DNA from: Auanema rhodensis
Taxonomy: Eukaryota; Animalia; Nematoda
DNA length: 64,000 nt
Direction: 5' to 3'
Assembly: GCA_964057225.1 (NCBI GenBank)
Contig: OZ059897.1
Location: 15,810,001-15,874,000 of the forward strand
How positions within the stretch are numbered: the first letter of the stretch is position 1; each line of letters opens with the position of its first letter. The translations under genes were made by a program, and so were the position numbers. The notes under the pieces were generated by a model, which saw nothing but the letters and a program-made list of their open reading frames with translations, was not told where the DNA came from and searched no databases. Below, piece by piece: positions 43,792 through 64,000 of the stretch.

Positions 43792-44373
43792 ATGTTTGCG
43801 AAACCTACAAATATCACGTGAGCATCATTTTCATTTTTAAACCGACTGAACGACTGGTTGCAATCACCTCAATAATCAATATATAGTAAATCTCCACGCA
43901 TAAATCAAAAATCCGAAATTTTTGAAAGTCTGCAAAATCGTTCATCTTTTTTAACTCTCTTGTACACCATCTGCATTATTAGACCAACGTCTCCCAATGC
44001 AAACACTGGGCGGGAAATGAAGCCATTTGACTTTAATGTCGATCCTGACTTCCCAACTGAAGCGCCACGGTACCTTAAGACAATTTAAACATATACGAAT
44101 GAATGACTTTAGAGCAAGAGGTCTTATTAACATTCCTGAAGGATGGAATTCTGATCGACAAGTAGATGAAGAATTTAGACATGGATTCCGATGGAACACT
44201 GTTAGTTGCTACATAACATCAAAAGTTTTGATTAAGATTTCAGGAACATATAAGCCCGTCCACAACATCAAAACCTTGGGATTTATTAAGATCAGAGCGA
44301 CAAATTGATCAAAGCTATCGACAACAGGTTCAATATTTCCTGAATTTATTTAAACTAATAACAGGGAAAATAG
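43792..44373 (+). CDS. Putative orphan spliced gene (~129 aa), unknown function
   Basis: Two 43-nt GT-AG introns (44070-44112, 44201-44243) join frames into ...DFPTEAPRARGLINIPEGWNSDRQ...FRWNTEHISPSTTSKPW...; first and last exons are tentative. Confidence 0.45.
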
Positions 44374-46319
44374 GGAGTTTAATCCTATGTTGCTGTCATA
44401 TACATAGGTTAAACTACAAAGATTATTCAATAACAATGATCTCATCTTCTTGCCGAAACTTTTAGATATCTCATAACATTCTTTCATTCGAAAATGATTA
44501 ATAGATTAAAAAGAAAGAGATGAAGTCTCGCATTTATTATGACTCGAAGATTGAAAACAGTACTCTGTGACAAAAAGAAATGAAGGTAACTACGAATGAC
44601 AGTCTGAACATCAACCGGGAATGTACAAACGATATAGTTAAGATCTTCTTTCGGTAGGCATTTCGTCAGAGTATTGCATAAATATAGATGCTCAAATAAG
44701 TATTGTTTATTTTCCACCTATTGTTGACCTCTTCGAAAACAGCCCACTCGGCGAAATTGTTGGAATAATGCCAGTTTGTCAGAACTTCTTTAGGCGGGAG
44801 ATTCCGATTGACCGTTGTTGTTGTATATGGTCGTTTAATGATCATGAGTGAACCAACAAGGCATTGACACCTAAGCTACGGTATGAAAAAAAGATGTTAC
44901 TTTAGAAAAAGTGACGTTTTAATGACATTGCACCGTATGTATTCTGTATCATACCGTTTATTCTGTTTATGAAATGGTTGATTTACTAATTAGCTATTTT
45001 CTTGGCAGTAATCTTATATAGAAATACTCGTATTGTTTAATTATTTTATTTCTAAGTATTGAACAATATCTCAAAAATGACAACCTAGATTTTCACTAGT
45101 GAATATGAGCTGTGTTCGGAAAAGTTTGATGGTGGTGAAGTTATAAGAATCTGTGCTTGTTTGAATCCCTCAAAGTGAGGAGCAAGGAATAAGATTTATG
45201 AATGCAAACTATTAATTTAGAAAGATAAATCTAAAATAAAAGTAAAACACGAATTAATCCACATATTTTACAAATAGTGATTTAAATCAAAAAAGCTACT
45301 TTTTTTTAGGGTTTCCCTGTTTTTCGTAGACAGTAAGAAGATTCTGCTAATACCACTATGATGAGCAATCTAGTCTTTTACCTTCTACCTTATGTACGTA
45401 AATACTTATTGTACAGAAAACATACTAACCTACTATATATTTTCATTTAAGTGTTAATAATGGAAATTTTCTGTTCTCGATTCATTTAACTAGTCATAAC
45501 ATGAACATATAAATAAATTTATTTATATATTTCCACTTAATAATAAATGTTGATTCATGAAAATTAGTAATATATATATATATATATGTTAAAATCGATT
45601 CACGCCTGAAGTTAGCAAAACGTGAACCTAAGCAACCCAACCACATTAATGTTAACAATCTGATAACCCTGAATTTCTGGTAAATAACTCGAATTTAAAA
45701 TATATAGGACAAACATTATTTTAGCACTATAGCAAAAATACTTAGAGACGTGCTATTATGTTCGTTAGTCCCTTGGCATGCCGGTGTATTTTTGCTCGCT
45801 CAGTAGTATGTAGGAGGTCAGGTCAAATTATATTGATTGGTAGGCGCATGGCATTACAACATTCGTAGAAGACTTATTAATGTCATCCAAATAAAAATCC
45901 TATTTGAATAAAGGATGATTATCTGCTTTGTATCTTCTATGCATAACAAAGTTTTTTGCATTTTATTTATGATACCATTACGTAGAAGTTTGATTGAATA
46001 TGAAGACAATTGAAAGATTGAATAAATAGTTGTGTTTGAGTAGTGAATATTTTTAGAGTTAGATTTAAAAGTAATAAATTGAATCTGTAGTGTTATTAAG
46101 TTGAATTGTAAAGCTTAACGAATTGTAATGCTTGCCAAAGAATTATTGCTACTGCACAGCAATGTATGAAATAACCGTCAACCATAAAATATAGCATGTA
46201 CTTACAATTCTGGTTCGAATTCACGATTTTATAGAGGCGCAGAATCAATTTTTTATAACTTCTTAAAATAAACGTAAAGAATTCTGGCGTCTACATAGAG
46301 GAATCTACTTCTACAGGAC

Positions 46320-46640
46320 ATGCCTGGTACTGAACATCAAGGACTAGAGAAGAGAGAGCCCGTTTGCATAGTCGCGTCGGACCAATATCAGAGCGCGTGC
46401 GGACGCGCAACGCGGCCACAATGGACTGATGCGAATCCAAAAAGGGACAACGTCGGTGGTCGTGGTAGGCTAAGAAAAGGCGGTAGCACGGATCGAGATA
46501 TAGTCTTTTCTTATTTGAAGAGTTTCTCTAAGCTTTTTTGGCATCTGCTCTACGGCGGGCCCCCCACAGTCACAATTATATTGGGGTGCGCGTCATGTGT
46601 AAGCTCCGCCCCTTGTATTGCGTCCTCGCGTTTGCGTTCT
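46320..46640 (+). promoter_or_regulatory. GC/CpG-rich promoter region upstream of din-1
   Basis: Sharp local GC rise with many CGCG/GCGC words, followed by a T-rich outron-like tract just before the first exon. Confidence 0.55.
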
Positions 46641-46771
46641 ACAGCGTATCTCTTTGTTCTTTTTTCGTTTTCTATATTTTTTGTCTTAGTTTTTAACATT
46701 TTAATTTTTTTTGAATTAAGGAAAATATATGTTCTAAAGGTCGTATGTCATAAAAATCGTTGACTGATGGC

Positions 46772-49700
46772 ATGGCTAACGTATTTGCACAATCTTTGAT
46801 GCCAAGAGAGAGTCGTCATGTTCTTGTATCAGGACTACCCGATAATTTAACAAATGAGAAGACAATTATCGAATTCTTTTCTCGGTATATTTAGAAAAAT
46901 TTATTTTTGTACTCGTTCATTTGAGGTACGGCCGCGTGCAAAAAGCTGAGAAGTGTGAGAACGGAATCGTTGTGTCCTTTATGGACGTTAGGGCCGCTCA
47001 AAAAGCTCAATCCGGAGATAAAAAATTAGATGGAGCAATCTCTTTTGAGCTCTCTTTCTATGAACCTTCTACCGGCACGAAGTAAGTTGTCATGTTTTAT
47101 TCTTGTTGAGTTCTGGAATTTTACAATTGCCATCTGCTATACCGTCTGTTGCTAATATCATCTTTAGATTGAGTTACTTATTGATTTATATTGTTTAAGT
47201 AGAATTATTCTTTTCTAAAAATTAAAAAAAAATTCCTTATCCTGATATTCTTTTTTCACTATTACAACGTTTCATTAAATATTCCTAAAAAGAATTTCTA
47301 TGTTCATCTGGCTGTTCAGTTATATCTTGTTGTTTCAGTGGTCCTGTATTCACTCAGTTACCAGAATCACCTCTGGTACCGACCTCATCTAATTATGACA
47401 CGGTAAAACGTGCCATGTCACCCAAGAAAGAATCTCGGTAAGGACCCTTATAGTTATTTTAGTTAAATAATATTCTTATAGCTCTTCTCGCTCTGCAAAC
47501 TTATCATCTAGAAGACAAAGTCGACAAGAAAATCATAGGTTTGTAAACATGAAAATATTTCGAATAATATTCCTAAATGCTGCTATATTCAATCTATATT
47601 AGGCAACGTCCGTCAGGTTGTTCTATGCCTTACAAATATTCAGTTTATTTATTCACGCTTCAATTTTTTCATTATCTTATCTTATTATTCTATATAATTA
47701 ATTATAATATTATAATTGTAAAGTTAATTTTTATGCTTTTGTTTTTGAGTAATTTTATTGCTCCTGAATGCTGGTTTGTATGCTAGGGTTTTTTTTAGCT
47801 TATCGTAGGGATAATCTCATCGTTTGAGGTACCAGTGTTTTCACCTTGTTAGGTTCTATAAGAAAATAACCTTGACTATGAGTGGATTTTTGCGGGCGAT
47901 CAATAAGTGAATGACAGAACCCACGCGCTAAAATTGAAATTTAGCTCCTAAATTCCAGACATTATGAATCATTTTTTTCAGACGATCATCAGAGACTTGT
48001 GACGATGATACGATAGTATCAACATGTGTCTCGGGAATGCAAGGGGTTTACGTAGTTCTGGAAGATTTCCAAGAGGGTATCATGGACGCTGTTCTGAAGG
48101 CTCAAATCCGAAAAGAATTGAGAATGTTCGGCTCAATAGCTTATATAATACTAACAGAAATTGAAGATGAGGATAATAAATGTGCTATGGTTATTTTCAA
48201 AAAGTAAGATTTTACTTTATTCACTCTGAAATACAATTTTCTTTTAGCGTTTACGAATTCGACAAGCTTCAAGCTGCCAAGTACATAATGGTTGATCAGA
48301 CAAAATGTAGATTAAAACGAGCTACACCAGTTGAAGTTCACGATGCCTACAGTGCTCAGCTAAGTGCCAACATGATCACGGCTTGTGCACGAGATGTTGA
48401 CCTACCTCAGCCTAGAAGATGTAATCGGAGTTACTCCTCTCAGCAGGATAAGGATTTTAGCAATTCAGACTTCTACCATTGCTTGGATGAAATTCAGCAA
48501 CTTCAAGATTCACCTCCTAGGACATATACATTTGATAGACATTCATCCGATGAAGAATTCGATCCCCTTTTCTCATCCGAAGTTTGGCCGAAAGCTAAAT
48601 CCGAGTCTGGATCAGAGGATGGGGAACCATACCATTCACCTGAAGCTTATTCTTCCGGAGATGGTGTATCTCCTCCTCAATCTCTATCTTCTGGAAGTAG
48701 TAGCCCTCCTGGAGAAAGTGGTGCGAGCTCATGTCCTAATAACTACTCAACTCCTATGGAGTTAGATCTTACAGAAAATGGCGATACTTCCATGATATCT
48801 AAAAATCCTGCTTCGGCTGATGATATGCATATGGATATTGATCTCAATGAGGATGCTCAAGTTTTTTCTCCTGTGTCTAATCGACAATATTCCACAGATT
48901 CAAAATCTCCCTTTTCTGGAAAATATGTCTCACAAGGCCGGTCGGATGCTTTAAAGTTTCATGAACATTTCTCTCGTAGTTCGAAAGAACCATCTTCGAA
49001 GCAATTGCATGGACATTCTCAATGCGTTCGTAGCAATTGTGATCCTGATTCTGATGATTTCTCGGAAATGCGAAATCGCTCACCTGACGAACGTATTGAC
49101 TATGAACTATCATCTTTCTCACTTAAAAAACGTGGTCCGAAATCAAATGTTGGCGACTGTTGTGGGTCTATTGAAGATTGTGAGTATGGCATTAGATCTG
49201 AATCGTCCGAGGATTTTGAAAATTCAAGTGATTCCTCAGCTGGCTCAGTATGCTCGGAATGTTCTGTCCAAACAGATGTAAGATATTCTTTGATTTAAAA
49301 AAAAAGATAATCATTGTTATTTCAGTTAGCAGTTCAGGAACTTCAAACAGACAAACTGAGAATAGATTCCATTCCATTAGATGCTCCCGAATCTTTTGTG
49401 ACTCAAGCGCTTAGACAGATGTTAAGCTTGTGCTTGGATGTTATATATGATGTTCATAGGTGTCAAGCTGTAGCGACATTTCCTAGTGAAAAAATTGCAC
49501 ATGATGTTTGGATTGAATCTAAAATAGCGAAACTGTAAGCTTAAAATATTTATTTAATATTTCAAATTTTTTAATTTCAAGAATACTTGTATGGGAAAAT
49601 GAAAGTTACCTTCTTTCTGTGCATTTATGTTCCAACCAATATTTTGAAGAATTTCTTCGTTTGCAATCTAAGCTTCCCTTTTGTCCGTTACTTGGCGATG

Positions 49701-52700
49701 TTAATGATTTGGATGATAATTTGGATGATGAGTAAGTATTTATAAATTTTTTTCTGACTAAGATTGGTTTACAGACATCGTCGAATTGACGAGGAATTGA
49801 AAAACATTTCCTGGAATGATCTTGATGATCCACAAATTTCTTCGGAGCCTAAAGCTGAACATTCCAATATATTTCAACCTCTCTCAATTTCAAGTTCTGA
49901 ATTTAGTAGTCCTTGTGTGTCACCTGAACCCACTTATGTTTGTTCGGATTGTCTTATTGATGCGATGCAGTTAACAAGAAAAGAAGGTATGATAGTGGTA
50001 TTTGTTTGAGTTGAAAATTTTGTTCTAGATTCCTCTGAGGTTAGTAAAGTCTGTATTGTGGATGATTCTGAGCATCACAAGCGAAATGATAATGTACTTG
50101 ATCAGCAATCCCAAGGACATAATCTGACACACTTTGGTATGAACATATAAAATGAGAGTAAGATACCGTTTTTGTTAAAGCTGCAAACCACGATAACAGT
50201 GGTTCTGAGGATGGAAAAAGTTCTGATGATGATGAAGAACGTACAGAGGAAGATCATCTTTCTGAAAATCATTCCGATGGATCAGTATCGAGGGAAGACC
50301 ATGCTATTGGCACTAGCAGTGACAATACAGACGAAGAGCAGGTTGATAATGAAGGGGTCGAAGCTATGGAAATTGCCTCTGACTCTGATAAGGATGACTC
50401 TTGCTCGATTTCTGACCTGAATGAAATAAAACAGAAAAAACAACACAAAGATGATCGGTATAACAATTTTTAATACATATTTCATTGTTTTTGTTTGTTT
50501 TCAGTTCACAATATTCTTCATCAAGTTCTGATCATGAATCAGCAGATGTACCTCATACTTCACATACTATAGAAAATAATTGTCATGAAAATTCCGAGAA
50601 TAGTTCACATGAATCTAATTTATGTTTGTTTTTTCATTTTTATAAATAATAATTTTTCAACTTTCAGACTCCGTTTATATAGATAAAAATTATTCTGATA
50701 GTCCCTCTGAGCCAAAAATCGAAAGTGAAAAAACAGAAGATCATCAATTAACAGTTTTTGAAACAAGGTGCTTCTTTATTAATTTAATTTTTAATTGTTG
50801 TTTAAACTTCAGAACAACTGGGGAATCTAGCTCTAATTTCGAAACTTTACTTCCGCCTCCTCCGCCGCCTATTCTACTCTCTCCTGATTCTGAATTGGAA
50901 AGGAAATTTTCTGAGGTCTGCGAAATAATAACTGCTAAAGTAATTGTTTTGAAATTTAATTTACTGTTCAGGAAACTGAGGGAGATCCTGATGATATTGT
51001 TCAAAGTGGAACTTCGCCACCCCCTCATATGGAATCAGAATTTCAAGTTAAAGGAGAATACACTGGGTGAGAATTTGTTTGGAACAATTTTTTAAATGTA
51101 ATTTGTTAAGGTATGATGAAAAAGTTGGATTTACATGGCCTATTGGTGAAGAACTCCATAACCCACTCGAAATTTCTTTAGACGTTAGTGATAAGGCACT
51201 GTCCGATCCTCGACTAGAATATGAAAACGACTCAAGTGATGATAATTTTCCTGAGTTTCTTGGTAGACTAATTCAAAATGATGAGCCAAAAAGGTACACT
51301 ACAATATTAATACCGAGCTAATGTTATATGCTCTTTCTTGTTTCAGAATAGCAGCTCTGTTTATGGAAAGCACTCCAGTTAACCATAATAGCGATGATTT
51401 ACGAACTGTAATTTCTGATATTGATATTAATGAAATCAAAGAAGAATCTGACTCGGACCAATCCGATGATGCTATTATACCATTGCATGATCCAGCTGTT
51501 GTTCATATCGAAGGAATTAGCAGTCCTAGTGGTGAGGATGAAGACCTGGATCTAGGAATGCAAAATGAAGACGTGGTTGACCATATTCTGGATGAAGCTA
51601 ACGCTTTGAATGATGAAGAAGAATACGCAAGTGCCGATGAAATTGAGCCGTATTTGAGTGATGATAACGACAATGATTTGGATGAAACTTTCATGACATG
51701 TCGTGGTCTTGAAGATGATGAAATCGAACCGAGTATTCAAATAATTACCATGGACGCTGCTGTTGATACTGGTTCGAAAGAATACGGTTTTAGTGGAATT
51801 GAAGGGGATGAGTTTGCTTCTGAAAATGATATATCGAGGCTTGAACTTGTCGACAAAGATGCTGAGCAAATATCTCATGCGCTTGACACCGTTTTAGAAG
51901 TTCATCTCGTTGATCTGGACGAAGATGAATTTCTTGACCTGAGAGGAGATTTAACTGCTCAAGTTATCGAGGTAGATGCCGAAAACGATATAGAAGCTGA
52001 ATGCGAAATATATTGTAATGATTTGGTGTCTTCTGATAGTGAAGAAGACGAAGAGGAAGTTGAAGAGCAAGAAGAAGAAGTCATCTTAGAAACGGAAACT
52101 TCTAGCAAACCCGTGATAAAGGATATGGAGAGTACTGCTGTAGAAGACATATCTGATGACGAATCGGATCACAATGAGAAGGAAGTAGATGTGCGAGATC
52201 CTAAAGTAGAATGCGAACAGAGCGTCAAATTACAAGCTACTGAAAAAGTATCAGAGCCACTCATAGAAGTTCAGTTTGAAATTAAAGCATCTGCATCGAC
52301 TGTAGAAAATGAAGAAGCTTTTATGTATTCTTTGTATCTAGCTGAGCTTTCTCAAAGGAAACTTATGTCAGACAAGTCTGCAAGCTTAGATCTTAATACA
52401 CAAGATGATGAAAGTACAGAAGAAGTTACTAGTTCAGATGAGAACGGTTCTGGGAGTTCTGATGACGATGTCAGAAATAAACAAGAGTTACACCAAAATC
52501 GCTTAGAACGTTCTCACACAATGAAAAAAATTAACAGCTCAGGTAGGGGTAAGAAAATATTATTTATTATATTTTCAATAATGTGTTTTTAAGATGGACG
52601 ACCAGAAATTAGCTCCAATTGTGTAAAAGAAGCTTATGATGAGAAAGTATGCCGGAATCGCATCAGCGAAGATGGAGAATCTGAAGGGAATAGCGATAAA

Positions 52701-55700
52701 ACTGGTTCAATACAATTTCGTTGTGGTTCACCATTACCTACAGCAAAGAAATTCGTTTCGTCAGTTTGTCCTCTACTGGAGTTAGCATCAGAGCTAGGCA
52801 TACCTAATATTATTAGCCGTCCAGAAATGGTAATTTAATTGTGCAGTTCTTTTTAAAGTTGCTTTCTTCTAGAACAAAAGGCCTTTAACACCACCCTCCA
52901 TATCACGTTCAGCATCCCTCAGTGCTCTCTTTTATGAAGTATGTTATGTTGCAATAATTATTTATTATTTCTCGTTGTAGACAACTAAACATCGAAATGG
53001 ACTTCGCGATCGAACATACTCAGTTCCCCAGAAATTAGATAAACTTAATGAAGAGGACTGTCCATACTATGAATTGAATATTTTATTCCCTTCTTTGGAG
53101 CAGGTGAATGGTATCAGCACCGAGGATCTTAAAGAAGCCTACAACTCTGATGAATCTACGGATAATTCTATGAGTAGTTGTTCAAGTTCGGATGAATCAA
53201 ACGGAGAAGATAATGTAGGTCCTAATTTATTTTCCTATTATAATATTTTTTTAAAGGAAATCGAAAGTTCTGAAAGCGTCCCCCGAAGCGCTATGTTCTA
53301 CAACACTGATGCAGATACCGTTGCCGCGGTTTCTAAATCGTTGGCAAAGATTAATAGGCGTTTTTCAAATATGAGTTGTGATGGCGAATCACATCTAATT
53401 GGAGGGGCTAATAAAGATAAAGAAGACAATGCTGATTTAGCACAATCCTCTGCCAGCCCTATATCATCTGAGGATAGAATGAGCTATCAATCCCTGGAGG
53501 AACAGGTAGAGGCGATTAACGCTTCACTTGAGGACGAAACGGAGGAGCATCTTAATTTTGTTGAAGCTTCTAAAGCTAACGAAGATGGCGCTTTTTCTAA
53601 TTGTGTTGACGGAAATTCTGAATGCTACGACGACGAAGATGTTTCGGACCGAGATTACCCTGTGCGCAATGAAGAATACGATGCCGAATATGACAGTGAT
53701 AGTTCTGAATATTCGGCCTGCTCTTATGATTCTGAAGACAGTGATCGTATAATTCGATATAATTATCAACTTTCCAATTCTAACGACAATGAAAATGATA
53801 AGGAAACTGAAGAAGGTTCCAATGAAGCGGATGCCGATTCGCAGTCCTCTGAAGATGAAGTATCTCGCCTGCGAAATTATTTGTTTGGACTTATTTCTGA
53901 CGAAGATTCGGGTTCTGATAGATGTGAGACACCTCCACTTCCTAAAATTTCTTGTGAGAATGGACAGAATATCTCGCAAACAAAATACCAGAGTAACTTT
54001 GAGGTATGTTCATGTAGTTGATGTAAGATTACTAAAATATTTTAGACCGCTAACAATCCATCCCAATTCAAATCTCAGACCCCACCACTACAAGATTCTA
54101 TGAAATCACAATCGCCTTCTTTTGAAAATGTAACGGATGAAGAGAAGTTCAGCTCTTCAGGATGTTCTGGAGCAGATTCAGAGAAAGATTCTGAGGTCAC
54201 CCATAGTCCAAGCGAGAATATTCCACCCTTTGACTATGATTCACAATATTCTGATAGTTCAATTGAAGAGTATTTGGAACAGGTTTTTATCTTGTTTATA
54301 CTAATTTTACTAATTGTTTTTTTAGAATGTAAGACCTGAAAGGTCAGGAACTCCATGCAAAAGCTCTGTTTCTCCTAAACATGATGATGAAAGGCTCCCT
54401 ACTCCTAGCTATCTTGATGAGCTTTATGAGCATGAATTGGCTAGTATTTCTTACGAGCACTACTCTTATCATGGAAAATATCGAGACCTAGAAGGAGTAG
54501 AATCTCCGGAAGAAGACTTTGTTCTGGAAGAACTCAAAGGTGCTTTTCAAGAAGTGGATTCTGATGATGAAGTTGACGGATGTTCTCCTCTCTCTTACAA
54601 TGTAAGAGAATCTCTTTGTGAAATCGGGGATGATGATGTATTTGAGCAAAAACAACTTGATAATACTGTCTCAAACTGCCAAACATTCAATCAGGACGAA
54701 GATAGCTTCCATCGCAGCCCTGAAAATATTTTGAGTTTGAATGACACTCTTGATATGCGAGAAGACAGCCAATTGGATAGCCCCCAGAACGATTCTGATG
54801 ATTCAGCTCAAGAAGATGGAATAGAAGAATCTTCAAGCTCAGAAAGCGGTGATGATCTTAGTGAGGATGAACATGAAGACTATGAAGATGAGGAAGGTGA
54901 TTTAGAAGAAGATCTTCCATATCGGGAATATAGGGATCGCACCGAAAAAGATGTTATTTGGGTAACAATACCTGGGCCTCCATGCACGCCTCCAGGAACA
55001 CCACCTCGCTGGTCGCCTACTGCTGATAGTGAAGTTTGCTTACCACCGAACTGTGAGGATGAACTGAATGATTCTGATTATGAGGTTGAATACGATTACC
55101 CGCTTGTTCAAGACCCAACCCAACTTTCGACGCTCAATGACTATGAAGATGAGTGCCAGGAATATGAAGATCGTGTTGATGACCCATGCACTTATTCTCC
55201 TAGTGAATCGAGTTTGCATACTGATGAAACCAAGTGTATGGAAGAAGACTATTCTCCTATTCAGGATCAGGAGCAATGCTCGCAATATGCGGATACCACA
55301 TTGGATCACAATAAACTAAGTGAATGCCTTGAGGAAGAATTGGAGACCATGGATGACTATGTTCATCATTTACAACCCCGTTCTCCTGATGAAGGTCCAG
55401 CATCTCCTGATTACGAGCCAGAATATCTTGACGAAGATTACCAACATCCGCTCACAATTGACTATGCACAGCTCTCCCCAGAAGAGGATGGACAATATAG
55501 CAGCGATGATTACATTGAAGAAGACGTTGTCATACAAGATGATGGCTTACAGTACTTCGAAGAAGAGCCTGTGCAAGATGAGTGGGAGTTTCGAGAAGAA
55601 GGAACACCGCCACTTCCAGATGATAGTCGTAGAATTTATGATGTGGCTACTCCACCTTATGATCCTGAATATATTTTGAATTCGTCATTTAATCTTAGCC

Positions 55701-56924
55701 CCACTTCTTGTAGTGAAGATGATGAAAACGAGGTAAACTAATTATTTTATTATATATACATATATATATATATTAGTTTTTTAAGGACTTTTTGTCGTCA
55801 GGTTCAACTTCTGCTTCAGTATCTGGATCTGAAGAAGTTTCGGATTCTGAATCCGATTCTGAATCTGATTCTGAATCTGATTCTGAATCTGCTTCTATGG
55901 ATGAAAATTACTATTGTGAAACTCCTCCAATGCGCGAATCACGGTCACCTTCACCTCACCATGCGAACGAGATTGAAGCAATTTACATGCCACCTGACGA
56001 ACTATTGGTAAACTATAAAATTAATATTTTGTATCTATCTTTTATTTCAGAATCAATCTGCTTCCGTTAGTCCTGATATGGGTATAACAAACCAGAATCC
56101 GTCACCTCTACAATCACCTAAATTGGCCGTTCGTGAATCAATATTCCATCCAAAAAGTACTTCGACTGATGAGATGGATGATGAAGTTGCATCTTCGAAA
56201 TCGTATATTCAACAAGTCCTATCGTCCATAAGATCGCCTCCCCAAGAAGAACCTGCTCCAGTCTCATCACTTAGATCAAGTTTTGAGGTAAATTGTAACT
56301 GTTACTATTAATCGTAACAATTTGAATTTTAGCAGGGTTCACTATCTAACCGCAACTCATCACCAACTCGAGAGGATTCTACTCCAGCCTTTGCAACATC
56401 ACGGACGTCTTTTGAGGTATTAAATCAGTTAATAACTTTTCCTATTCACGTTTTTGTGTTTATAGGAACGCTTGAAAATGTTGCATTCAAAGGAAAAGAA
56501 GACTGATGTGAGGTTCAGTTTGGATTTAAGCAAGATTGGAAGTTCACCTTCATCAAGTTCACCTTTATTCTCATCTGTTGGAAAGGAGTCTTCATTGTTA
56601 TCCAATAACAGCTCTTGTAATCCATTAAGGATAGAGATACCACCGGTTAACTACACTGTTGGATCTCCTGCTAACTTCTCTCCAAGAGTAAAATAGTAAT
56701 TACAAAATTTTCATAATTGTTTAATTTCAGCGTTCACTTCTCACTACAAAACCTCTTTCATCTCCTGTACAACTATCCATACCTGATCAAAAGTCTCCGC
56801 TCCTGTCTGCTCCTCCACAACCTCCGCTCTTGCCGCCTCTCCCAAGTCGGTCTGATGTCGTGGCATTGAAATCACCTCCAGTAACTCCACATTTGTTCAC
56901 GGGGCAGCATGCAACATCAAGTAA

Positions 56925-56969
<45 letters not shown>

Positions 56970-59900
56970 TTTATCGACTAAATTGATATGTTTTAGATCG
57001 CGAAAATTTAGAACCAAACAAGTCATTTGTTGCTTCAAAACCTACTTCAAGCACCGAAAGAGAAAGGCTATCATCTATTGGAAGTATACCACGACACGAA
57101 TCATTATTTGCATCAAAATCACCTTCTCTTCCTCTGCCGATGCGGTCAAATTCAATGTCTGAAATGAAGAAAACGTCGAGGGTAATTTTTTTACAGAAAA
57201 TCAGCAATCAATTTTCTCCTTTTGAAGGATCATATTGATTTCCTGGCTAAAGGCAGTGATTCGGACGCGAGAAAGTTGTCATCTAATGAGAAGAAATCTA
57301 CTAGTTCAAACTTGTCAAGTGACAAGCTTTATAAGAACAAAGACGTTGAAAAAGATGGCAAGAAGTCTAAAGATCATAAACTGGTTTGTTACATCTTTTG
57401 ATATGTGATTAGTATATACGGTATTTAGCGTCAGAAGGAAGATGGCTCATATGAAACTAAAGAGGAAAGAGCTAACAGGAAAGAGATGGAGCGAACTAGA
57501 AAGGAAGAAAAACGAAAAGAGCTGAAAAAAGAGAAAAAGGTATATTTTTTAGTATCTGAATTTCATTGGGGAAAATGTTACAATATTAGGCTAAGGAGGA
57601 GAAGAAACGCAAAAAGGATGAAAAAGACAAGAAGAAAAAATCTCGAGAAAGGGAGCGTGAACGAGAACGTGACAAAGAAGGCGATAAGAAAAACAAGAGA
57701 AAGAAGAAGCAAAAGCATAGTAATGAAGATGAGACCGATGGCACGGATAGTGAACCAGATACATTCAAGGTATTTTATAGAATTTGTTTTGGTTCTAAAT
57801 TAACATTTAGTCTTGGCCGAAAAAGGCAAATTCATCTTCTGTGCAAGATATACTAATAGGAGGTTCTATGTATGATCGTGTTAAACGTCGCAGCAACGCT
57901 GCCGTTAGAGATGATGTCAAGAAGAGCGCATTGGAAGCTTTGAGAGAAAAGAACAAGAAGGGGGTATGTATCCATGTTAATTAAAGGTTTTAATGAATCA
58001 CGGTTTTTAGCGCAAAATTGTACGCGTCGAATCGTCGGATGAAGATGACTCGCAAGTTCATGATTCTGATGACTCTGATGATGAAGAGACCAATGAATTC
58101 TCTCGAAACGTTGATATCAACAGCAGTGATGAGAATGAGGATGATTCGTTAAATATTACAAAATCAGCAAAGCAAAGGAGGGAATCAAAGACGTATAATT
58201 CATCGGATAGCGATTCTGGCAGTGATTCGGAGATTAAATCTAAAGTAGAACTGAAACAACAAAAGAAGACTGTAAGTTTTTAATGGCATTTACCTTATTA
58301 TTAATTATCTCATTTCAGAGAATTAACATGGAGAATGATGAGAGCACTGATGAAGATCGTGATAATAAGTCTAAAGTTCACGAAGAAGATAATGCTACTG
58401 GTGACTATGAGTCTATTTTCGGCTCAGATGAAGTTATGCTTAGTACAAATGATATAACTGCTGAAGAAAAATCCCGTAAACGGAGCGCTATTGACGGTTA
58501 CTATTATATTTTAATAAAATCATATTATCAATGGTTTTTTAGATCACATGGATGCGAAAAGGAAGCGTAAAAATTCTGGTTCGTCTTGCATATCTTCTGA
58601 GTCTGACGATTCTAACAAACGTGCAAACTCAAAGCGAGATAGCCTTGGGAATGAAACAGATGAGATGCATCACGAGGAGGAATCAGTTTCTAACTTGGTT
58701 AGACAATTTTAATTTACCAAAATTTATTGTTTTTTTTTACAGGATCTTACTCCACCAGCTCGTGCTGAGACTGAAATTAAACCTCGTTTGATAACTAAGG
58801 CTGCTATGAAAGTTTTTGAGACCCCATCAACTTCCACTCATAACGCAAAGGTTTGTTTTCGCTTTTACAAGTTGCATCCTGAGGTTGCTTATTATGTTGT
58901 TCTGTTTGTACGTTTTGACTGTGTGTTGTTATTTAGCCAAGTTCGGACGAATCCGATAACTCTGATGATTCATCAGCCACTGATCATCTGTATGGAGATC
59001 GAAGAAGTGCTTCACCTACTAGTAGTCACCTATCTGAAGAATCGGAGAATGAATCACAAATGAGCACTCGCTCTAAGCATTCTACGTATATGCCACAAGC
59101 ATTTGAACCTGTACTTCCTAATACTCCTGTTGATTTTGCGAATATGGATATTACTATATCAGCTGAAAAGCCGAATAAATCTCCTGAAGAAATGGACACA
59201 TCCAACCAAATTGATGCTGCTCTTGAGGATCCCAACGAAGCTAGAGCAGCTGCTGCCCAAATACAAGAGTTGAATGAAAGTCAAGAATCGCATGGTTCTG
59301 ATGAGATATTCAACTTACGACCTTCCGCAGAAATCGAACAAAATTGCTCGGATACCCCTGAAGCTATAGATCTATCAGAACTGGCTACTGATCACGAAGA
59401 TGAACAGGTATGAAATGTAGCATGTTTGATGTTGTGATTGAGTTGGATTTTCATTTTTTCTTCGGTATTGTCTTTTTATTTTCCTGTTTTTAGGAAACAC
59501 AACATGCTGTGCAGGGTATCTTTGATGATTATGAAGAAGAACAAGAACCACAGTATCCTTCTCATGATTTTATTAAAGTAAATCCGATTATTCCACCGAA
59601 GGCTGTTGAGGTAATATTCACCTTTTTTAATGTCATGAGACTATATTTCAGCTTCACCAACCAAGTTGTTCTTTCGTAGCAGATGAAAATGAGTCCAAGA
59701 TGGATGCAGATATGAACGATGGCTCGTTAGCTGATGTTCCTTCATCTGCCGAAGCTGACATACCTACCGACCCATCTTGTATTAAGGACGATATGCCAGA
59801 GGAAGAATTAAAAACAACAGAATCTGAGAGTATAGTCTCAGCTGATCAAGACACAATTGATATTTACGCGGAATCTCCTGCGATGGTCATTGCCAATGAT

Positions 59901-61564
59901 ACAGATATTTCAACATCTCCGGCCATAATGTCACCTGAGCCTGAATCCGATTCTTGTAGTAGAGTCAGTTTCTTTCAGACTGATTCTTCTCCTAACATAT
60001 CTCAACCGGTGGCAGCTTTGCCGGGAACGAATTCATCTGCTGTCGCGTCTTCACAGGCTGATTCTATTTTGCTCCAAGATATGATTAGCAATCAACAGTC
60101 ACATACTACATCCAACCAATGCATGATAACAGCGACTAAAGAAGAAGAACCTTCTGTTCAACAAATCGTACGATCTCAATCTCCCGTACAACAACGTGCC
60201 GTGACTCCTCCGAAACCTACCCGTGAAACATTAGCAGAAACAACTCTCACATCTCAGCATTTACCTGTTATTCAACAGCCAAATTCTGTGGTGAAACAAA
60301 CCAGCGTTGTTCAAGCAGTAACAACTGCAGCTGGCTCTCCAGTCGCAGCTCTTGTACCTACCAGTAGGGTGGAAATTAAAACGTCTGAAACTGCTTCGAA
60401 ATCTGAAAAGCCTGCCTCTTCCGCTACAAAGGTTCAAGAGAATAAAGCTGTACCAGCAACGAAATCATTATCTGCGAAGTCAGGTTCCAAACCTACTTTC
60501 TATAAACCTGAGGAAATTAGGATAATTCTTACCGATGTTAGAGCTCCTGGTGCAAGAAAGGCTCAATTAGCGCAACAGCAAGCACAACAACAGGCTAAAT
60601 TTACTGATTCGAAGGTTGAACCGTCCACAAGTGATGTGTCGCCATCTACAATTGATACTCATGTATCACAAAAAGGAGAAGTGCGATCTACTCAATCTGA
60701 CGAAGTGCGATCAAGTCAATCTACTCCAGCTCAGTCGAATACTGGACCAACTGTTGTTAGTACATCTGTAGTTCAGCAGCAACCGCTTGATCAGAAACTT
60801 CTTCAACAGCATAGGCAACTTCTTACTCCTGTTTCAACTACCAGCACTACTTCAGTTGTATCACAATTGCCTTATTTGCATCAAAGTGATCCAACAACCT
60901 CTCAACCAAATCAGCTACGTGCTCCTGTTTCTCAACAGCCGAGTTCAGTAACACCAACGTCTACGTCATCCCAACGGTTGATGCCGCAAACGCAACTACA
61001 AAACACATTCCCAGTTCATGCACCAACATCATCCGCTCAAAGAACTGTACCCTCTCAACAAATTCAACAACAGGTGTGAAGTTCTTGATAAATTCATTCA
61101 ATCATATTCCCGTTTTTCAGCAACAAATTCAATCACAACATCTGCTCTTACAAATTTTGGACAGTGCTCGCAAGGGTCAAACACCAGGAATTCAAAGTGG
61201 AATTCAACAACATACTGTCTCATCTTATCATAATGAAATTGCGACAAATTTACTTGAAGTTTTGATCTCGGTACTCAAGCAGATGCATCCTCAACGTAAT
61301 TTTTTTTGTAATTCCGGTATATTATATATATTTTTTTTAGTTCAAATGTCACAACAACCTGCGATTCAACAGTTAATGGGAAAGTATTACCTTTTCCAAG
61401 TAAATTGACCTTATAATTCTCTTAAATGCTAATCTTTTTTAGAACGGTACCGTATCTATTCATGAAGTTATAGCCCCGATTCAAACAATCGCTAATAACA
61501 TTCCATATCCATATTCATCTCAAATACTCCAAAGATGTCAAATATTCCAACATCAACTTCATTC

Positions 61565-61619
<55 letters not shown>

Positions 61620-62045
61620 AGTATCCCGACTACTCCTGCACTTATTCAGGGTCAACAACAACAACAAACACAACAACAGCAAAGGCAACAACAGGTAATG
61701 TTTTTCTTTTAGAAATTTTCTGTGATCTTCATTTTGTATGAAGCTTGTCAACATTTAAGACACAGGGTTAAATTCTCATGATGTGTATTTCAGAGTTCGC
61801 CTGCCGTTCCTCATCTACCTCAACAAGCAGTGCCTTCTTCGAATGCGGGTGATGTACAAGCCGTTCCCTCCCTTATTGGAGCACCTACCGTAACCACTCA
61901 GATTTCTGGCGGGACTCCAGCTCCAAATGTTACTGGAGCTGGTCCTGTTGTGCCATCTAGTGATAAAGTCTACACACCTTCACAAAACCAACAACCACAG
62001 CAACAATCACTATCTCTTGATGCCGTGTTGAGGGATGATTTGCCC
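46772..62045 (+). CDS. din-1: SPEN/SHARP ortholog DIN-1 long isoform (RRMs, acidic and low-complexity regions, RID-like motif, polyQ); continues beyond the window, SPOC domain not present
   Basis: MPRESRHVLVSGLPDNL...IIEFFSRYGRVQ matches SPEN RRM1 (MVRETRHLWVGNLPEN...IIEHFKRYGRVE). Degenerate RRM2-like exon 47982-48203 and RRM4-like exons ~49326-49670; SMYDRVKRRS spen motif ~57865; ETQHAVQGIF RID-like motif at 59494. The last exon seen ends at 62045 (CCC|GTAAGT). Confidence 0.85.
55839..55890 (+). repeat. 12-bp coding tandem repeat encoding (SDSE)x4
   Basis: GATTCTGAATC[C/T] repeated four times in a din-1 exon. Confidence 0.9.
56927..56966. repeat. (AT)n microsatellite in a din-1 intron
   Basis: About 20 AT units directly after the GTAAGC donor. 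Confidence 0.95.
61566..61618 (+). repeat. (CAA/CAG)n polyglutamine-coding tract in din-1
   Basis: CAA run followed by CAG/CAA codons in a Q-rich exon. Confidence 0.9.
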
Positions 62046-62958
62046 GTAAGTTTCGATGTGTTTACTATTTTGTTTGTGTGCCTGCAACTCCTCCATGTGC
62101 CGGGGTGCAGGCTGGCACCGCGAACGCCGTTTTCACTTCATCTTTTGGTTGTCTTGTGTCTCTCTCGTTCTCAAGCGATCAGGCTGCTGGGACAGCAGCA
62201 GCCCTGTCCTTCCCTCCCCCAGGCCGATTGCCCCCTCTCTCTTTTTCTTTCTCATCTCACTTCATCGTGTTCTCTCTCTCCTCCCCACATTGCACGTTCG
62301 TGTTTGTTGAGGGGGCCGCTTCGCAACCGCTCGCGCTCTGTCCTTTCTTTCAGGACATAGTAAGTACCAGCCAGCCAGCCGCATTGACTGTCTCACTTTT
62401 CTCTTATCCTCTCCAATACTAAACTGTTCTCTCATTCGATTAACTCGTCGTCAGCGCGCTCCGTCCGGCGTATAGTGCCTCTCTATCGTCTTTGCCCCAC
62501 TCGTTCTATAGATTCTCTTCATTGCTACATAGTTAGAGCTTGGTTTTTGGTTCAAACGACAGACACGCAGAATTCTCAGGTTGTCTGACTATCAGCTCCT
62601 CCCAGCCAACTATTTGTTGGCCGTTTAGAACGCTGTCCATATTTTGCATCAGCAGCATAGTCTCCCGGCGTGGGACATGATTCGTCTCAAGTAAACCACA
62701 TCTACCTCACCTTTACCTCCAACTACCTCAACTCATCTACCTCATTTGCTGTCCTCACTGGACTAAGCAGGTTTTCTTTTTTCCCTGTACAAATATCGTC
62801 CTTAGGAACTTATTCGTATATCCCAGTTTTCCTCTGTGCTTATAGCTGGTAACTATATTCTTATTACCTTTTGCTGTATCAAACGGATATTCTGTGAACT
62901 ACCTCTACTTATTCGCCTCCATTCGAGATCTCTTACGCAAATTCTTTTATTTTCTTTT
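62046..62958 (+). promoter_or_regulatory. Putative internal promoter/5' region within a din-1 intron
   Basis: Unusually long, GC- and CT-tract-rich interval, unlike the ~45-nt AT-rich introns of the rest of the gene; similar in composition to the 46.3-46.6 kb promoter. Confidence 0.55.
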
Positions 62959-64000
62959 ATGAGCTCTAGCGGAATTCCTATTGATTCGACCAAACGTGCT
63001 CGAAAGTCATCTGAACCTCAGAGAATTGTCTTGAATCCTATAAAATCTCCTTCTACGATGAACTCTAACAATACTCCGTTTTCCTCACTCGGTGATATTT
63101 CATTGGCACAGCTGCAAGCAGCTATCAACGGAGCTTCTGCATCCAACGGTGCCGCTCAAACTACGGATCAAACCATGATCTTTAACCTGGCCAGTGCCAT
63201 TGCTATGAACAGTTTTCTAACTTTGCCAAATCCTAATAACCCTCTCATTGCGAATGTGGCTAAAATGATTCTAAGTTTGAATGTTCTTAATCAGCAAAAT
63301 GATTTGCTTGGAAGCAACAATCGTACTGATCCTTCTCAGTTAGGCAGTGCATTGATGTCGCCAATGCTCCTTCAGCAGTATGCTTCCACAATTGGAAGAG
63401 GCCAACCTTCGCAATCTGCAGCTGCATCTACTCCACAGCAAGCACTGCCGACGTCACAACCGACTTCACTAGGCTCTTTCCAACAACCACTGAAGAATTC
63501 ATCGGAGAACCAGCGCAAGCGATCGCTCGGAAACGAGCACACAGCTCTAGATACTAGCGCAAAGCGGGTCTTTGGCGAAACTGGCGCTGGAGCTGTAGAT
63601 AATCAGCCGGCTGTGCCGGTATCCAAAGACGACATCGAGAATTCACTTATTCGAATTCTTAATGAAGAGATTTATAACATATATGATGAGACTTTAAAAT
63701 CGGAACCCCAAGATCCGCCATCATCTCCTGGACAAGCTGCATTGATATCTGAAAGCAGACAGAGTAGTGGCTCCGATAGTAAAGGAGTATGCCGGTCAAC
63801 TCCTAATGAAGAAATTCCTATCGAATCAATGAGTCTTTTTGAAATTCTTGATTTACTCACTAGTGAAACTTCCGCAGATATTAGCTCATCAGGATCTGCT
63901 TTCCGGAAAGTTTCCAGCAAATCTGAAATTGGTTCTATTGCTAGTAGTTCATCGGATTCATCTCAGTGGGGGAATACTATCTCTCCTCCAAACAGCTCTC
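62959..64000 (+). CDS. din-1: Long ORF (>347 aa, open to the window end): probable unique first exon of a short DIN-1S-like isoform
   Basis: ATG AGC TCT AGC GGA at 62959 with no in-frame stop to 64000. KRARK and RKRS..KR basic motifs; LIRIL (63646-63660) and LFEIL(DLL) (63835-63858). Confidence 0.65.
   Translation, partial: MSSSGIPIDSTKRARKSSEPQRIVLNPIKSPSTMNSNNTPFSSLGDISLAQLQAAINGASASNGAAQTTDQTMIFNLASAIAMNSFLTLPNPNNPLIANVAKMILSLNVLNQQNDLLGSNNRTDPSQLGSALMSPMLLQQYASTIGRGQPSQSAAASTPQQALPTSQPTSLGSFQQPLKNSSENQRKRSLGNEHTALDTSAKRVFGETGAGAVDNQPAVPVSKDDIENSLIRILNEEIYNIYDETLKSEPQDPPSSPGQAALISESRQSSGSDSKGVCRSTPNEEIPIESMSLFEILDLLTSETSADISSSGSAFRKVSSKSEIGSIASSSSDSSQWGNTISPPNSS

What the first reader, a model, noticed from the sequence alone, without database searches (positions are those of the whole stretch)
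62046..64000. Nested internal promoter and unique first exon with two LxxIL motifs: candidate DIN-1S-type DAF-12 corepressor isoform
Seen: the din-1 exon ending at 62045 has a phase-0 donor, followed by ~900 bp of GC/CT-rich promoter-like DNA, then an intronless ORF from ATG 62959 to the window end (347+ codons; absent from the ORF track because it has no stop). The nearest AG (CTCTAG|C at 62969) is phase 2, so it cannot join the upstream exon in frame, which favours an independent start. The peptide has two LxxIL motifs (LIRIL, LFEILDLL) and NLS-like basic patches. Known: C. elegans din-1 makes a short isoform, DIN-1S, with its own N-terminus carrying L/IxxI/VL-type nuclear-receptor boxes plus the SPOC domain; it is the corepressor of unliganded DAF-12 in dauer formation. 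Inference: this is the equivalent isoform in a divergent nematode, with architecture conserved even where primary sequence may not be alignable.
Basis: partly seen in the sequence, partly recalled or inferred. Interest (0 to 1): 0.75.

Follow-up and report, generated by a model that had tools for sequence, protein, structure and literature searches.

The report
Short DIN-1 corepressor isoform start
This is the start of the short form of a roundworm's DIN-1 protein, the partner that lets the DAF-12 hormone receptor switch genes off; it is an ordinary orthologue, but its conserved leader holds let-7 microRNA docking sites that suggest an undescribed feedback loop.

Summary
The exon ending at 62045 has a phase-0 donor. 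Then come 913 bp of GC/CT-rich DNA (GC 0.47 against 0.35 for the window). An ORF runs from ATG 62959 past the window end and carries LIRIL, LFEILDLL and basic patches.

- The ORF ends at a phase-0 donor at 64101 and joins SPOC-domain exons in frame, giving about 565 aa.
- It aligns with stand-alone SPOC proteins of C. remanei (574 aa) and C. brenneri (565 aa), and with models from hookworms, Dictyocaulus and Auanema. All start at the same Met.
- The motif L-x-x-I-L-x-E-E is invariant across these species. LFEILDLL is not kept in Caenorhabditis.
- Stop codons sit just before the ATG in most species.
- The sister species Auanema JU1783 has lost the long-isoform exons but keeps this unit.

New here: the upstream DNA looks like a spliced, ATG-depleted 5' leader, kept better than the coding sequence. 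It holds one conserved tiny uORF and a cluster of let-7 seed matches (CTACCTC). That is the only 7-mer repeated in all four lineages tested.

No transcript or binding data were available. The C. elegans DIN-1S sequence could not be retrieved.

The parts
61794..62045 (+). Last long-isoform-specific exon of the din-1/SPEN-type gene, with a phase-0 donor CCC|GTAAGT
   Evidence: It has 84 open codons. Upstream exons at 57429-59676 are collinear with the A. duodenale locus, whose upstream model has RRM_1. This donor is phase-compatible with the SPOC acceptor at 64360.
62046..62395 (+). GC/CT-rich conserved blocks A (62046-62240) and B (62290-62395): candidate internal promoter, transcript start region or outron of the short isoform
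   Evidence: Identity to Auanema JU1783 is 87% and 89%, while third codon positions of the adjacent exon are 49% identical. The ATG-free zone begins at about 62098.
62347..62365 (+). Invariant 19-mer CTTTCAGGRCATAGTAAGT: an acceptor-like TTTCAG|G, six bases (GACATA), then a donor GTAAGT. Candidate end of a very short first leader exon, or a 6-nt microexon.
   Evidence: It is identical in the window, JU1783, A. duodenale, A. ceylanicum and D. viviparus apart from one R position. It is followed by the only poorly conserved stretch, 62396-62559, at 48% identity.
62360..62562 (+). Inferred leader intron
   Evidence: It runs from a conserved donor to a conserved YAG|RSAMGSAGA acceptor (cag at 62560-62562). 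The interior is divergent. This is an inference; no transcript was seen.
62563..62958 (+). Inferred 5' leader exon continuous with the coding exon. Block C (62560-62835) is 91% identical to JU1783.
   Evidence: Alignments are. It has one upstream ATG in 861 nt where shuffles expect about 7.
62677..62694 (+). Conserved tiny uORF (MIRLK-stop)
   Evidence: A uORF sits at the same position just 5' of the seed-match cluster in all seven loci: MIRLK, MAVLK, MARLK, M(M)IRFK, M(M)I, MI. It is the only upstream ATG in the last 350-870 nt.
62702..62744 (+). Cluster of three let-7-family 8-mer seed matches (CTACCTCA at 62702, 62723, 62737)
   Evidence: The window has 5 matches where 1.16 are expected, and three are here. 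Sense-strand clusters lie upstream of the short-isoform ATG in all seven loci. CTACCTC is the only 7-mer with at least 2 copies in all four independent lineages. Orthologous sites in C. remanei and hookworms also pair with the 3' part of let-7.
62899..62905 (+). Fourth CTACCTC seed match, 60 nt before the ATG
   Evidence: It is conserved in JU1783 at -48.
62959..64000 (+). Short-isoform-specific coding exon. It runs on to 64101 beyond the window (381 codons). It then joins SPOC exons at 64360-64564, 64613-64776 and 64822-65007, in extended window coordinates.
   Evidence: Translation is. SPOC (PF07744) scores 35.7 bits.
63646..63672 (+). LIRILNEEI: invariant L-x-x-I-L-x-E-E-[IL] box, a candidate nuclear-receptor (CoRNR-like) docking helix
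   Evidence: L230, I233, L234, E236 and E237 are invariant across Auanema, strongylids, Mesorhabditis and Caenorhabditis. It lies in predicted helix 223-242, one of the better-predicted segments of the model.
63835..63858 (+). LFEILDLL: second hydrophobic helix motif
   Evidence: E-I-L is invariant in Auanema and strongylids but does not align in Caenorhabditis. It lies in predicted helix 293-301.
63514..63525 (+). RKRS basic patch
   Evidence: R186, K187 and S189 are invariant in all homologues. KRARK at 62992-63006 is nearly invariant outside Caenorhabditis.

Best explanation
Window 62046-64000, continuing to about 65007, is the short-isoform (DIN-1S-type) transcription unit nested in the last large intron of a SPEN/din-1 gene of an Auanema-like rhabditid nematode.

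Shown here:
- A 381-codon exon starts at a Met shared by all clade V homologues and joins the SPOC-domain exons in frame, giving about 565 aa without RRMs.
- The long isoform's donor at 62045 is phase-compatible with the same SPOC acceptor, so it can skip this exon.
- The exon is mostly predicted as disordered, with a few conserved helices. One carries the invariant box L-x-x-I-L-x-E-E-[IL].

Inferred:
- Transcription or trans-splicing starts in the conserved GC-rich blocks at 62046-62365.
- A roughly 200-nt leader intron is removed.
- The mature leader (62563-62958) carries one tiny uORF and three to four let-7-family seed matches.

Proposed mechanism:
- The L-x-x-I-L helix docks on the unliganded DAF-12 ligand-binding domain, as CoRNR boxes do, and the SPOC domain recruits repressor complexes.
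- The amount of the short isoform is set at its own promoter and, after transcription, by let-7-family microRNAs and the uORF acting on the leader.
- DAF-12/DIN-1S represses let-7-family genes in C. elegans, so this would close a double-negative loop.
For: - SPOC junction: phase-0 donor at 64101 and phase-0 acceptor at 64360; SPOC scores 35.7 bits against a cut-off of 25.
- Homologues: Auanema JU1783 at 80% identity, six strongylid species, Mesorhabditis, C. auriculariae, C. remanei and C. brenneri. The 10 models of alignment A1, one N-terminally cut, share the start Met, and all 9 in A4 begin with M.
- Locus context: RRM_1-bearing models lie upstream on the same strand in A. duodenale, A. ceylanicum, D. 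viviparus, C. remanei and C. brenneri. Upstream exons are collinear with the hookworm locus.
- Start codon: in-frame stops lie at -3 in strongylids, -12 in C. remanei, -51 in JU1783 and -156 in the window.
- Noncoding conservation: blocks at 87-91% identity against 49% at third codon positions.
- Leader signature: a single conserved uATG where 5-9 are expected.
- Splice signals: invariant donor element and conserved acceptor flanking a divergent stretch.
- Natural experiment: JU1783 lacks about 16 kb of long exons, and its remnant of the last long exon has stops in all frames, yet the short unit is intact.
- let-7 sites. The C. remanei site pairs 20 of 22 nt with let-7 (dG -27.7, z -4.4), and the hookworm site has z of about -2.9.
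- Literature: DAF-12 ChIP peak at the internal din-1S promoter (PMC3140985); a din-1S-specific null allele (PMC3656731); DIN-1S contains the receptor-interacting domain (PMC6337844).
Against: - No RNA evidence of any kind was available, so the transcript start, the leader intron and the skipping of this exon by the long isoform are all inferred.
- Automated long models in Caenorhabditis sp. 36 (2936 aa, including short-isoform residues 17-574) and Heterorhabditis (2340 aa, including the second half) fuse this exon to the long part. Long-plus-short isoforms are therefore not excluded.
- RRM_1 was not detected directly in the window.
- The C. elegans DIN-1S sequence and the founding paper could not be retrieved.
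- The second LxxIL motif is not conserved in Caenorhabditis.
- Canonical let-7 was not found in this assembly at up to 2 mismatches, and the 3-mismatch hits matched the control level. The window's own sites are seed-only.
- In Caenorhabditis a perfect DAF-12 DR5 element lies between the seed cluster and the ATG. If the transcript starts downstream of it, the sites are not in the mRNA.
Confidence: 0.8

Rival explanations
1. The exon is an internal cassette exon of the long isoform, alone or alongside the short form, with no promoter of its own. The conserved upstream DNA would then be intronic splicing-regulatory sequence.
For: Long gene models in Caenorhabditis sp. 36 and Heterorhabditis include much of the short-isoform sequence. 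Weak phase-0 AGs exist at 62806, 62827 and 63376. The invariant TTTCAG|GRCATA|GTAAGT element could be a 6-nt microexon of the long isoform.
Against: In-frame stops lie immediately before the shared Met in strongylids and C. remanei. The only strong acceptors in 62046-64101 are out of frame with the ORF. The ATG-depleted leader with a conserved uORF is not expected of an intron. JU1783 keeps the unit without intact long exons. A din-1S-specific null allele exists in C. elegans.
Confidence: 0.12
2. The CTACCTC cluster and its flanks are not microRNA sites in the short isoform's mRNA. Either they act on DNA as oriented promoter elements upstream of the transcript start, or they lie in RNA that is never a short-isoform leader: the long isoform's intron, or the 3'UTR of a truncated long isoform made by reading into this region.
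For: The transcript start is unknown. The Caenorhabditis DR5 element lies downstream of the cluster. Splicing 62045 to 62354 and then 62359 to 62563 would run into a stop soon after 62563, which would put the sites in a 3'UTR (sequence reading). Canonical let-7 was not found in this genome.
Against: All copies are on the sense strand and none on the antisense strand in seven loci. Spacing is 14-40 nt. The motif is exactly the let-7 seed match, and extended let-7 pairing appears in C. remanei and hookworms, which DNA-level function does not predict. ATG depletion and the uORF span the cluster. Conservation runs on to the ATG.
Confidence: 0.35
3. The ORF belongs to an unrelated, independent gene that merely lies next to the SPOC exons.
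For: Several annotations call it as a separate gene.
Against: Those same models contain the SPOC domain. The donor and acceptor phases match. The full-length models of JU1783, D. viviparus, C. remanei and C. brenneri join the exon to SPOC.
Confidence: 0.02

Closest known systems
[quoted passage not shown]
   Same: It sits within a din-1-type locus. It has its own start codon downstream of the long exons, no RRMs and a C-terminal SPOC domain. Its size is about 565 aa, against the 565-574 aa Caenorhabditis orthologue models. It aligns with the C. remanei, C. brenneri and C. auriculariae proteins. An internal promoter is published for C. elegans (PMC3140985).
   Different: Identity to C. remanei is only about 24%. 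The short-specific part is one intronless exon here but is split by introns in Caenorhabditis (the gene spans 3.6 kb). The C. elegans protein itself could not be compared. DAF-12 binding is untested.
CoRNR boxes of NCoR/SMRT (L/I-x-x-I/V-I, extended L-x-x-x-I-x-x-x-I/L); consensus recalled from memory
   Same: It is a short amphipathic helix in a disordered region with the pattern L-x-x-I-L-x-x-x-I/L, and it is conserved clade-wide.
   Different: It has Leu where the canonical box has Ile at the fifth position, plus an invariant acidic E-E pair. There is no homology to NCoR/SMRT or to the vertebrate SHARP receptor-interaction domain (PMC6337844). Docking was not tested.
let-7 complementary sites of heterochronic targets (lin-41 and daf-12 3'UTRs)
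   Same: There are multiple closely spaced seed matches on the sense strand, some with 3' pairing and a target bulge. The gene acts in the same DAF-12/let-7 circuit.
   Different: The sites lie upstream of the start codon, in a presumed 5' leader, not in a 3'UTR. They are paired with a conserved uORF. No paper in the searchable library reports them.
Human SHARP/SPEN and Drosophila Split ends
   Same: SPOC domain at the C-terminus, and a long acidic/serine-rich protein with N-terminal RNA-binding part in the long isoform.
   Different: A short receptor-binding isoform from an internal start is described only for nematode din-1. The RRMs were not detectable in this window with Pfam.

Membership tests
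DIN-1S-type short SPEN isoform | C-terminal SPOC domain joined in frame to the short-specific N-terminal exon | tested here: met
   Donor at 64101 and acceptor at 64360 are both phase 0. PF07744 scores 35.7 bits against a cut-off of 25. Exon map is from the JU1783 protein.
DIN-1S-type short SPEN isoform | Located inside the din-1/SPEN locus, downstream of the long-isoform (RRM-bearing) exons, same strand | tested here: met
   Upstream exons are collinear with the A. duodenale locus, whose upstream model has RRM_1. The same arrangement holds in A. ceylanicum, D. viviparus, C. remanei and C. brenneri. RRM_1 itself was not detected in the window.
DIN-1S-type short SPEN isoform | Own translation start that cannot be read through from upstream exons | tested here: met
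   The Met is shared by the aligned homologue models (one is N-terminally cut). Stops lie at -3, -12, -51 and -156. Strong acceptors are out of phase.
DIN-1S-type short SPEN isoform | Own promoter or transcript start (independent mRNA) | tested here: inconclusive
   The evidence is indirect only: conserved GC-rich blocks, an ATG-depleted leader with a uORF, conserved leader splice signals, and retention in JU1783 without long exons. No RNA data.
DIN-1S-type short SPEN isoform | Sequence homology to Caenorhabditis short DIN-1 proteins | tested here: met
   The profile hits C. remanei (574 aa, E 4e-18) and C. auriculariae (E 1e-12). Invariant motifs are in alignment A4. The C. elegans protein itself was not retrievable.
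DIN-1S-type short SPEN isoform | Short-specific exon skipped by the long isoform | tested here: inconclusive
   The donor at 62045 and the acceptor at 64360 are phase-compatible. However, automated long models in two other species include short-isoform sequence.
DIN-1S-type short SPEN isoform | Ligand-sensitive binding to DAF-12 and corepressor activity | not testable with these tools
   Needs two-hybrid or pull-down assays with the DAF-12 ligand-binding domain, with and without dafachronic acid.
CoRNR-type nuclear-receptor corepressor box | Amphipathic helix matching L/I-x-x-I/V-I or L-x-x-x-I-x-x-x-I/L | tested here: inconclusive
   LIRILNEEI reads L-x-x-I-L-x-x-x-I, with Leu in place of the canonical fifth-position Ile. 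It is invariant across the clade and predicted helical. The consensus is recalled from memory.
let-7-family microRNA target site array | Multiple conserved seed matches (7-mer or 8-mer) on the transcribed strand | tested here: met
   There are 2-4 sites per locus in seven loci, on the sense strand only. CTACCTC is the top 7-mer in an unbiased scan.
let-7-family microRNA target site array | Sites lie in the mature mRNA | not testable with these tools
   This is inferred from ATG depletion, the uORF and the splice-signal pattern. The transcript start is unknown.
let-7-family microRNA target site array | A microRNA with the GAGGUAG seed is encoded by this genome | tested here: inconclusive
   There is no match to canonical let-7 at up to 2 mismatches, the 3-mismatch hits matched the control level, and no convincing hairpin was found. 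The Rfam scan scored only 57 of 17,887 candidates.

The most novel reading that the evidence does not exclude
The mRNA leader of the short DIN-1 isoform is a conserved post-transcriptional control module: a tiny uORF followed by a cluster of let-7-family sites, kept from Caenorhabditis to hookworms. The let-7 microRNAs that DAF-12/DIN-1S represses would in turn repress DIN-1S. That makes a double-negative loop that could lock in the choice between dauer or infective-larva arrest and reproductive growth. Because the sites lie 5' of the start codon, 3'UTR-based target prediction would have missed them.
Probability: 0.5. Interest if true: 0.8.

Novelty: new member of a known kind. Interest (0 to 1): 0.6.

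Why it matters
- Reach of the corepressor. DIN-1S is the only described corepressor of DAF-12, the receptor that decides between dauer or infective-larva arrest and reproductive development, and which is a drug target in parasitic nematodes. It has been described only in C. elegans and is reported absent from Strongyloides (PMC7923533). This locus shows that the short isoform extends across clade V, including hookworms, Cooperia, Nippostrongylus and Dictyocaulus.
- A mutagenesis target. The invariant L-x-x-I-L-x-E-E box gives a precise set of residues to test.
- A testable circuit. The conserved leader with its uORF and let-7 seed matches suggests a link between the let-7 timer and the DAF-12 switch. 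It can be tested directly in C. elegans.

Tried and rejected
Searches and look-ups that gave nothing:
- Pfam on the short-specific exon found no family.
- Pfam RRM_1 on exon pieces and on the whole genome found no hit in the window.
- Word-based protein searches with the exon, with its alignment and with the C. remanei protein did not return C. elegans DIN-1.
- Ludewig et al. 2004 (PMC515290) is not held, so what I say about C. elegans exon numbering is from memory and is not used as evidence.
- Rfam found nothing in 61000-64000.
- The upstream region is single copy, so the repeat or transposon reading is rejected.
- Canonical DAF-12 hexamers and DR5 elements are not enriched in the window's upstream region. 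A perfect DR5 exists only in C. remanei and C. brenneri.
- The let-7 gene search in this genome (Rfam family, exact and mismatch patterns, hairpin pattern) gave no convincing precursor. One weak hairpin lies at C1:16203495-16203562.
- Logan contig L011, a 498-aa SPOC transcript, is from a distant species and is cut at its 5' end, so it says nothing about the leader.
- tblastn appeared to extend homology upstream of the ATG, but that part of the alignment is spurious because it crosses a stop in the hookworm.

Step deliberately left out: the joined 565-aa spliced protein was not searched or folded.

No contig looked human.
Full report
**1. Observation**

- Exon 61794-62045 is 84 open codons ending ...RDDLP, followed by GTAAGT. 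The preceding exon ends on a whole codon at 61697, so the donor is phase 0.
- The next 913 bp (62046-62958) have GC 0.47 and C+T 0.65, against a window GC of 0.353 (profile).
- This stretch is single copy in the 181-Mb genome and matches no Rfam family.
- ATG 62959 opens a frame of 347 codons to the window end.
- The peptide has LIRIL (residues 230-234), LFEILDLL (293-300), KRARK and RKRS.
- The AGs just after the ATG (62962-63 and 62968-69) are out of phase with a phase-0 donor.

**2. What lies beyond the window**

The window is G000:C5:15810001-15874000. I fetched the next 10 kb.

- The frame stays open to 64348, but a donor GAG|GTTTGT ends the exon at 64101, after 381 codons, in phase 0.
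- An acceptor TTTTTGCAG|GCA at 64360 starts ...AQFPVLWRGQILMK....
- This is the only SPOC (PF07744) match found in the genome, at 35.7 bits against a cut-off of 25.
- Mapping the Auanema JU1783 protein gives coding exons 62959-64101, 64360-64564, 64613-64776 and 64822-65007, about 565 aa.
- I did not search or fold the joined protein. Exons were handled by reference, one at a time.

**3. Relatives of the exon**

The 381-aa exon has no Pfam family but has clear homologues:

| Species | Note |
|---|---|
| Auanema sp. JU1783 | 80% identity, 560 aa, with SPOC |
| Ancylostoma duodenale, A. ceylanicum | gene models with SPOC |
| Nippostrongylus, Dictyocaulus, Cooperia, Cylicostephanus, Strongylus, Parelaphostrongylus | gene models |

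A profile search of 1.84 billion representatives added further hits:

| Species | Model length |
|---|---|
| C. remanei | 574 aa |
| C. auriculariae | 736 aa |
| Mesorhabditis belari | 458 aa (partial model) |
| Heterorhabditis | 2340 aa |
| Caenorhabditis sp. 36 | 2936 aa |

C. brenneri (565 aa) came from a further search.

- The full-length short models start at the same Met.
- Alignment A4 has these invariant columns: M1; R186, K187, S189; L230, I233, L234, E236, E237; S313, F315, R316.
- The first motif is therefore a clade-wide box, L-x-x-I-L-x-E-E-[IL]: LIRILNEEI here, LDRILNEEI in strongylids, LDIILLEEL in Caenorhabditis.
- The second motif keeps E-I-L in Auanema and strongylids only.
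- AlphaFold2 on A4 gives a mostly disordered chain (mean pLDDT 49). It has helices at 223-242 (the box; block means 73 and 68), at 293-301 (LFEILDLL) and at 359-379.
It is alignable, at about 24% identity.

**4. Is it inside a din-1/SPEN gene?**

- Pfam did not detect RRM_1 in the window, either on exon pieces or in a whole-genome scan.
- The + strand from about 46.3 to 62.0 kb is a chain of long open acidic, serine-rich and Q-rich exons.
- Three of these exons are collinear with the A. duodenale locus.
- In that locus the annotation has, in order, a 1918-aa RRM_1 model, an 879-aa model, the short SPOC model and a SPOC fragment.
- An RRM model sits upstream of the short SPOC model on the same strand in A. 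ceylanicum, D. viviparus, C. remanei and C. brenneri too.
- The donor at 62045 and the SPOC acceptor at 64360 are both phase 0. A long isoform can therefore skip the short-specific exon and stay in frame. This is an inference.

**5. Evidence for an independent start**

a. In-frame stops lie just before the shared ATG: TGA at -3 in three strongylids, -12 in C. remanei, -51 in JU1783 and -156 here.

b. The only strong TTNCAG acceptors in 62046-64101 are out of frame with the ORF.

c. Against JU1783, the noncoding blocks are far better conserved than neutral sites:

| Segment | Identity to JU1783 |
|---|---|
| 62046-62240 | 87% |
| 62290-62395 | 89% |
| 62560-62835 | 91% |
| Coding exon, all positions | 73% |
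| Coding exon, third positions | 49% |

C. remanei and C. brenneri are 86% identical over the 1.3 kb upstream of their ATG.

d. In each of seven loci the last 350-870 nt before the ATG hold a single upstream ATG, where dinucleotide shuffles expect 5-9. The leader length was set by the next ATG upstream, which flatters the per-species P values. The pattern nevertheless repeats in every lineage.

e. That single ATG opens a tiny uORF at the same position everywhere: MIRLK, MAVLK, MARLK, M(M)IRFK, M(M)I, MI.

f. A 19-mer, CTTTCAGGRCATAGTAAGT, is invariant from Auanema to strongylids.
- It combines an acceptor-like TTTCAG|G, six bases, and a donor.
- It is followed by the only divergent stretch (62396-62559, 48% identity).
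- Then comes a conserved YAG|RSAMGSAGA.
- This fits a leader intron at 62360-62562.

g. In JU1783, 18 kb of this window (44054-62031, the long exons) corresponds to about 2 kb, and the remnant of the last long exon has stops in all three frames. The leader and the short gene are nonetheless intact.

h. In C. elegans, DAF-12 ChIP peaks mark "promoter regions of alternative isoforms ... such as din-1S" (PMC3140985). dh127 is used as a din-1S-specific null allele (PMC3656731).

**6. Evidence that cuts the other way**

- Caenorhabditis sp. 36 has a 2936-aa model that contains residues 17-574 of the short protein.
- The Heterorhabditis model contains the second half of the exon.
- These are automated predictions and may be fusions. 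They do leave room for long isoforms that include this exon.
- No transcript evidence was available to me.

**7. The let-7 seed matches (new here)**

- CTACCTCA, the 8-mer match to the let-7-family seed, occurs at 62702, 62723 and 62737. The window has 5 copies where 1.16 are expected. A fourth CTACCTC lies at 62899.
- Sense-strand clusters lie upstream of the short ATG in every locus:

| Locus | Positions relative to the ATG |
|---|---|
| JU1783 | -236, -216, -202, -48 |
| A. duodenale | -413, -339, -322, -304 |
| A. ceylanicum | -416, -341, -324, -306 |
| D. viviparus | -296, -281 |
| C. remanei | -634, -616, -576 |
| C. brenneri | -570, -554, -512, -490 |

- There are almost no other copies in these 22-kb loci, and none on the antisense strand near the ATG (the one GAGGTAG within 2 kb upstream is at -1094 in A. 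ceylanicum).
- In an unbiased scan of all 7-mers in -750..-1, CTACCTC is the only one with at least two copies in all four independent lineages.
- The first C. remanei site pairs 20 of 22 nt with canonical let-7, with a 5-nt target bulge (dG -27.7 kcal/mol, z -4.4 against flank shuffles).
- The third hookworm site also has 3' pairing (z about -2.9). The sites in this window are seed-only.
- I found no paper in the searchable library that reports let-7 sites in din-1. Subscription journals are not covered.
I did not check it.

Caveats:
- Canonical let-7 was not found in this assembly at up to 2 mismatches, the 3-mismatch hits matched the control level, and no convincing precursor turned up.
- The transcript start is unknown.
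- In C. remanei and C. brenneri a perfect DAF-12 DR5 element (AGTGCA, five bases, AGTGCA) lies between the cluster and the ATG.

**8. Most likely mechanism**

Shown:
- A short SPOC protein with its own conserved Met.
- A conserved helical L-x-x-I-L-x-E-E box in a disordered N-terminal part.
- A conserved, ATG-depleted upstream region with a uORF and let-7 seed matches.

Inferred:
- An internal promoter or trans-splice site at 62046-62365 and a spliced leader.
- The box docks on unliganded DAF-12 as CoRNR boxes do, and SPOC recruits repressors.
- let-7-family microRNAs and the uORF limit the output of the short isoform. This would close a double-negative loop with DAF-12/DIN-1S repression of let-7-family genes, which is described in C. 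elegans.

**9. Verdict**

This is a DIN-1S-type unit, a new member of a known kind.
- The conserved leader module is the part that deserves follow-up. I put about even odds on it being a real let-7 control element of the short isoform's mRNA.

Noticed in passing
L004:7164-9132 (Auanema sp. JU1783) against window 44054-62045: The sister species' contig has only about 2 kb where this window has 18 kb of long-isoform exons. Its remnant of the last long exon has stop codons in all frames. The long DIN-1 isoform may be lost or moved there, or the assembly may be wrong.
   Followed up: partly
whole genome G000; weak hairpin at G000:C1:16203495-16203562 (L022): No match to canonical let-7 at up to 2 mismatches, the 3-mismatch hits matched the control level, and the six exact 12-mer matches do not fold as precursors. 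One weak hairpin begins with the let-7 seed. For a nematode this is unexpected and remains unexplained.
   Followed up: partly
L008:9766-9782 (C. remanei) and L009:9762-9778 (C. brenneri): A perfect DAF-12 DR5 response element (AGTGCA, five bases, AGTGCA, on the minus strand) lies about 235 nt upstream of the short-isoform ATG and is conserved between the two species. This fits the published DAF-12 ChIP peak at the din-1S promoter. The window has no counterpart.
   Followed up: partly
window 62347-62365: An invariant CTTTCAGGRCATAGTAAGT element is shared from Auanema to strongylids. It juxtaposes acceptor-like and donor-like signals six bases apart. It could be a 6-nt in-frame microexon of the long isoform, a very short first leader exon after trans-splicing, or a recursive-splice-like site.
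   Followed up: partly
window 61560-61697: A long CAA/CAG run encodes a polyglutamine tract in the second-to-last long-isoform exon. A weaker counterpart is visible in JU1783 (L004, about 8740-8790).
   Followed up: no
window 63178-63291: Two further conserved helices, IFNLASAIAMNSFL and NPLIANVAKMILSLNVLN, are nearly invariant in strongylids and recognisable in Caenorhabditis. They also have L/I-x-x-x-I/L spacing and could be additional receptor or partner contacts.
   Followed up: no
extended window about 66685-69661; L004:13656-16716; L006:22614-22666: An Ldh_2-family gene lies downstream of the SPOC exons in JU1783 and D. viviparus, and the matching DNA is present here. This small synteny block is kept between Auanema and a lungworm.
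   Followed up: no
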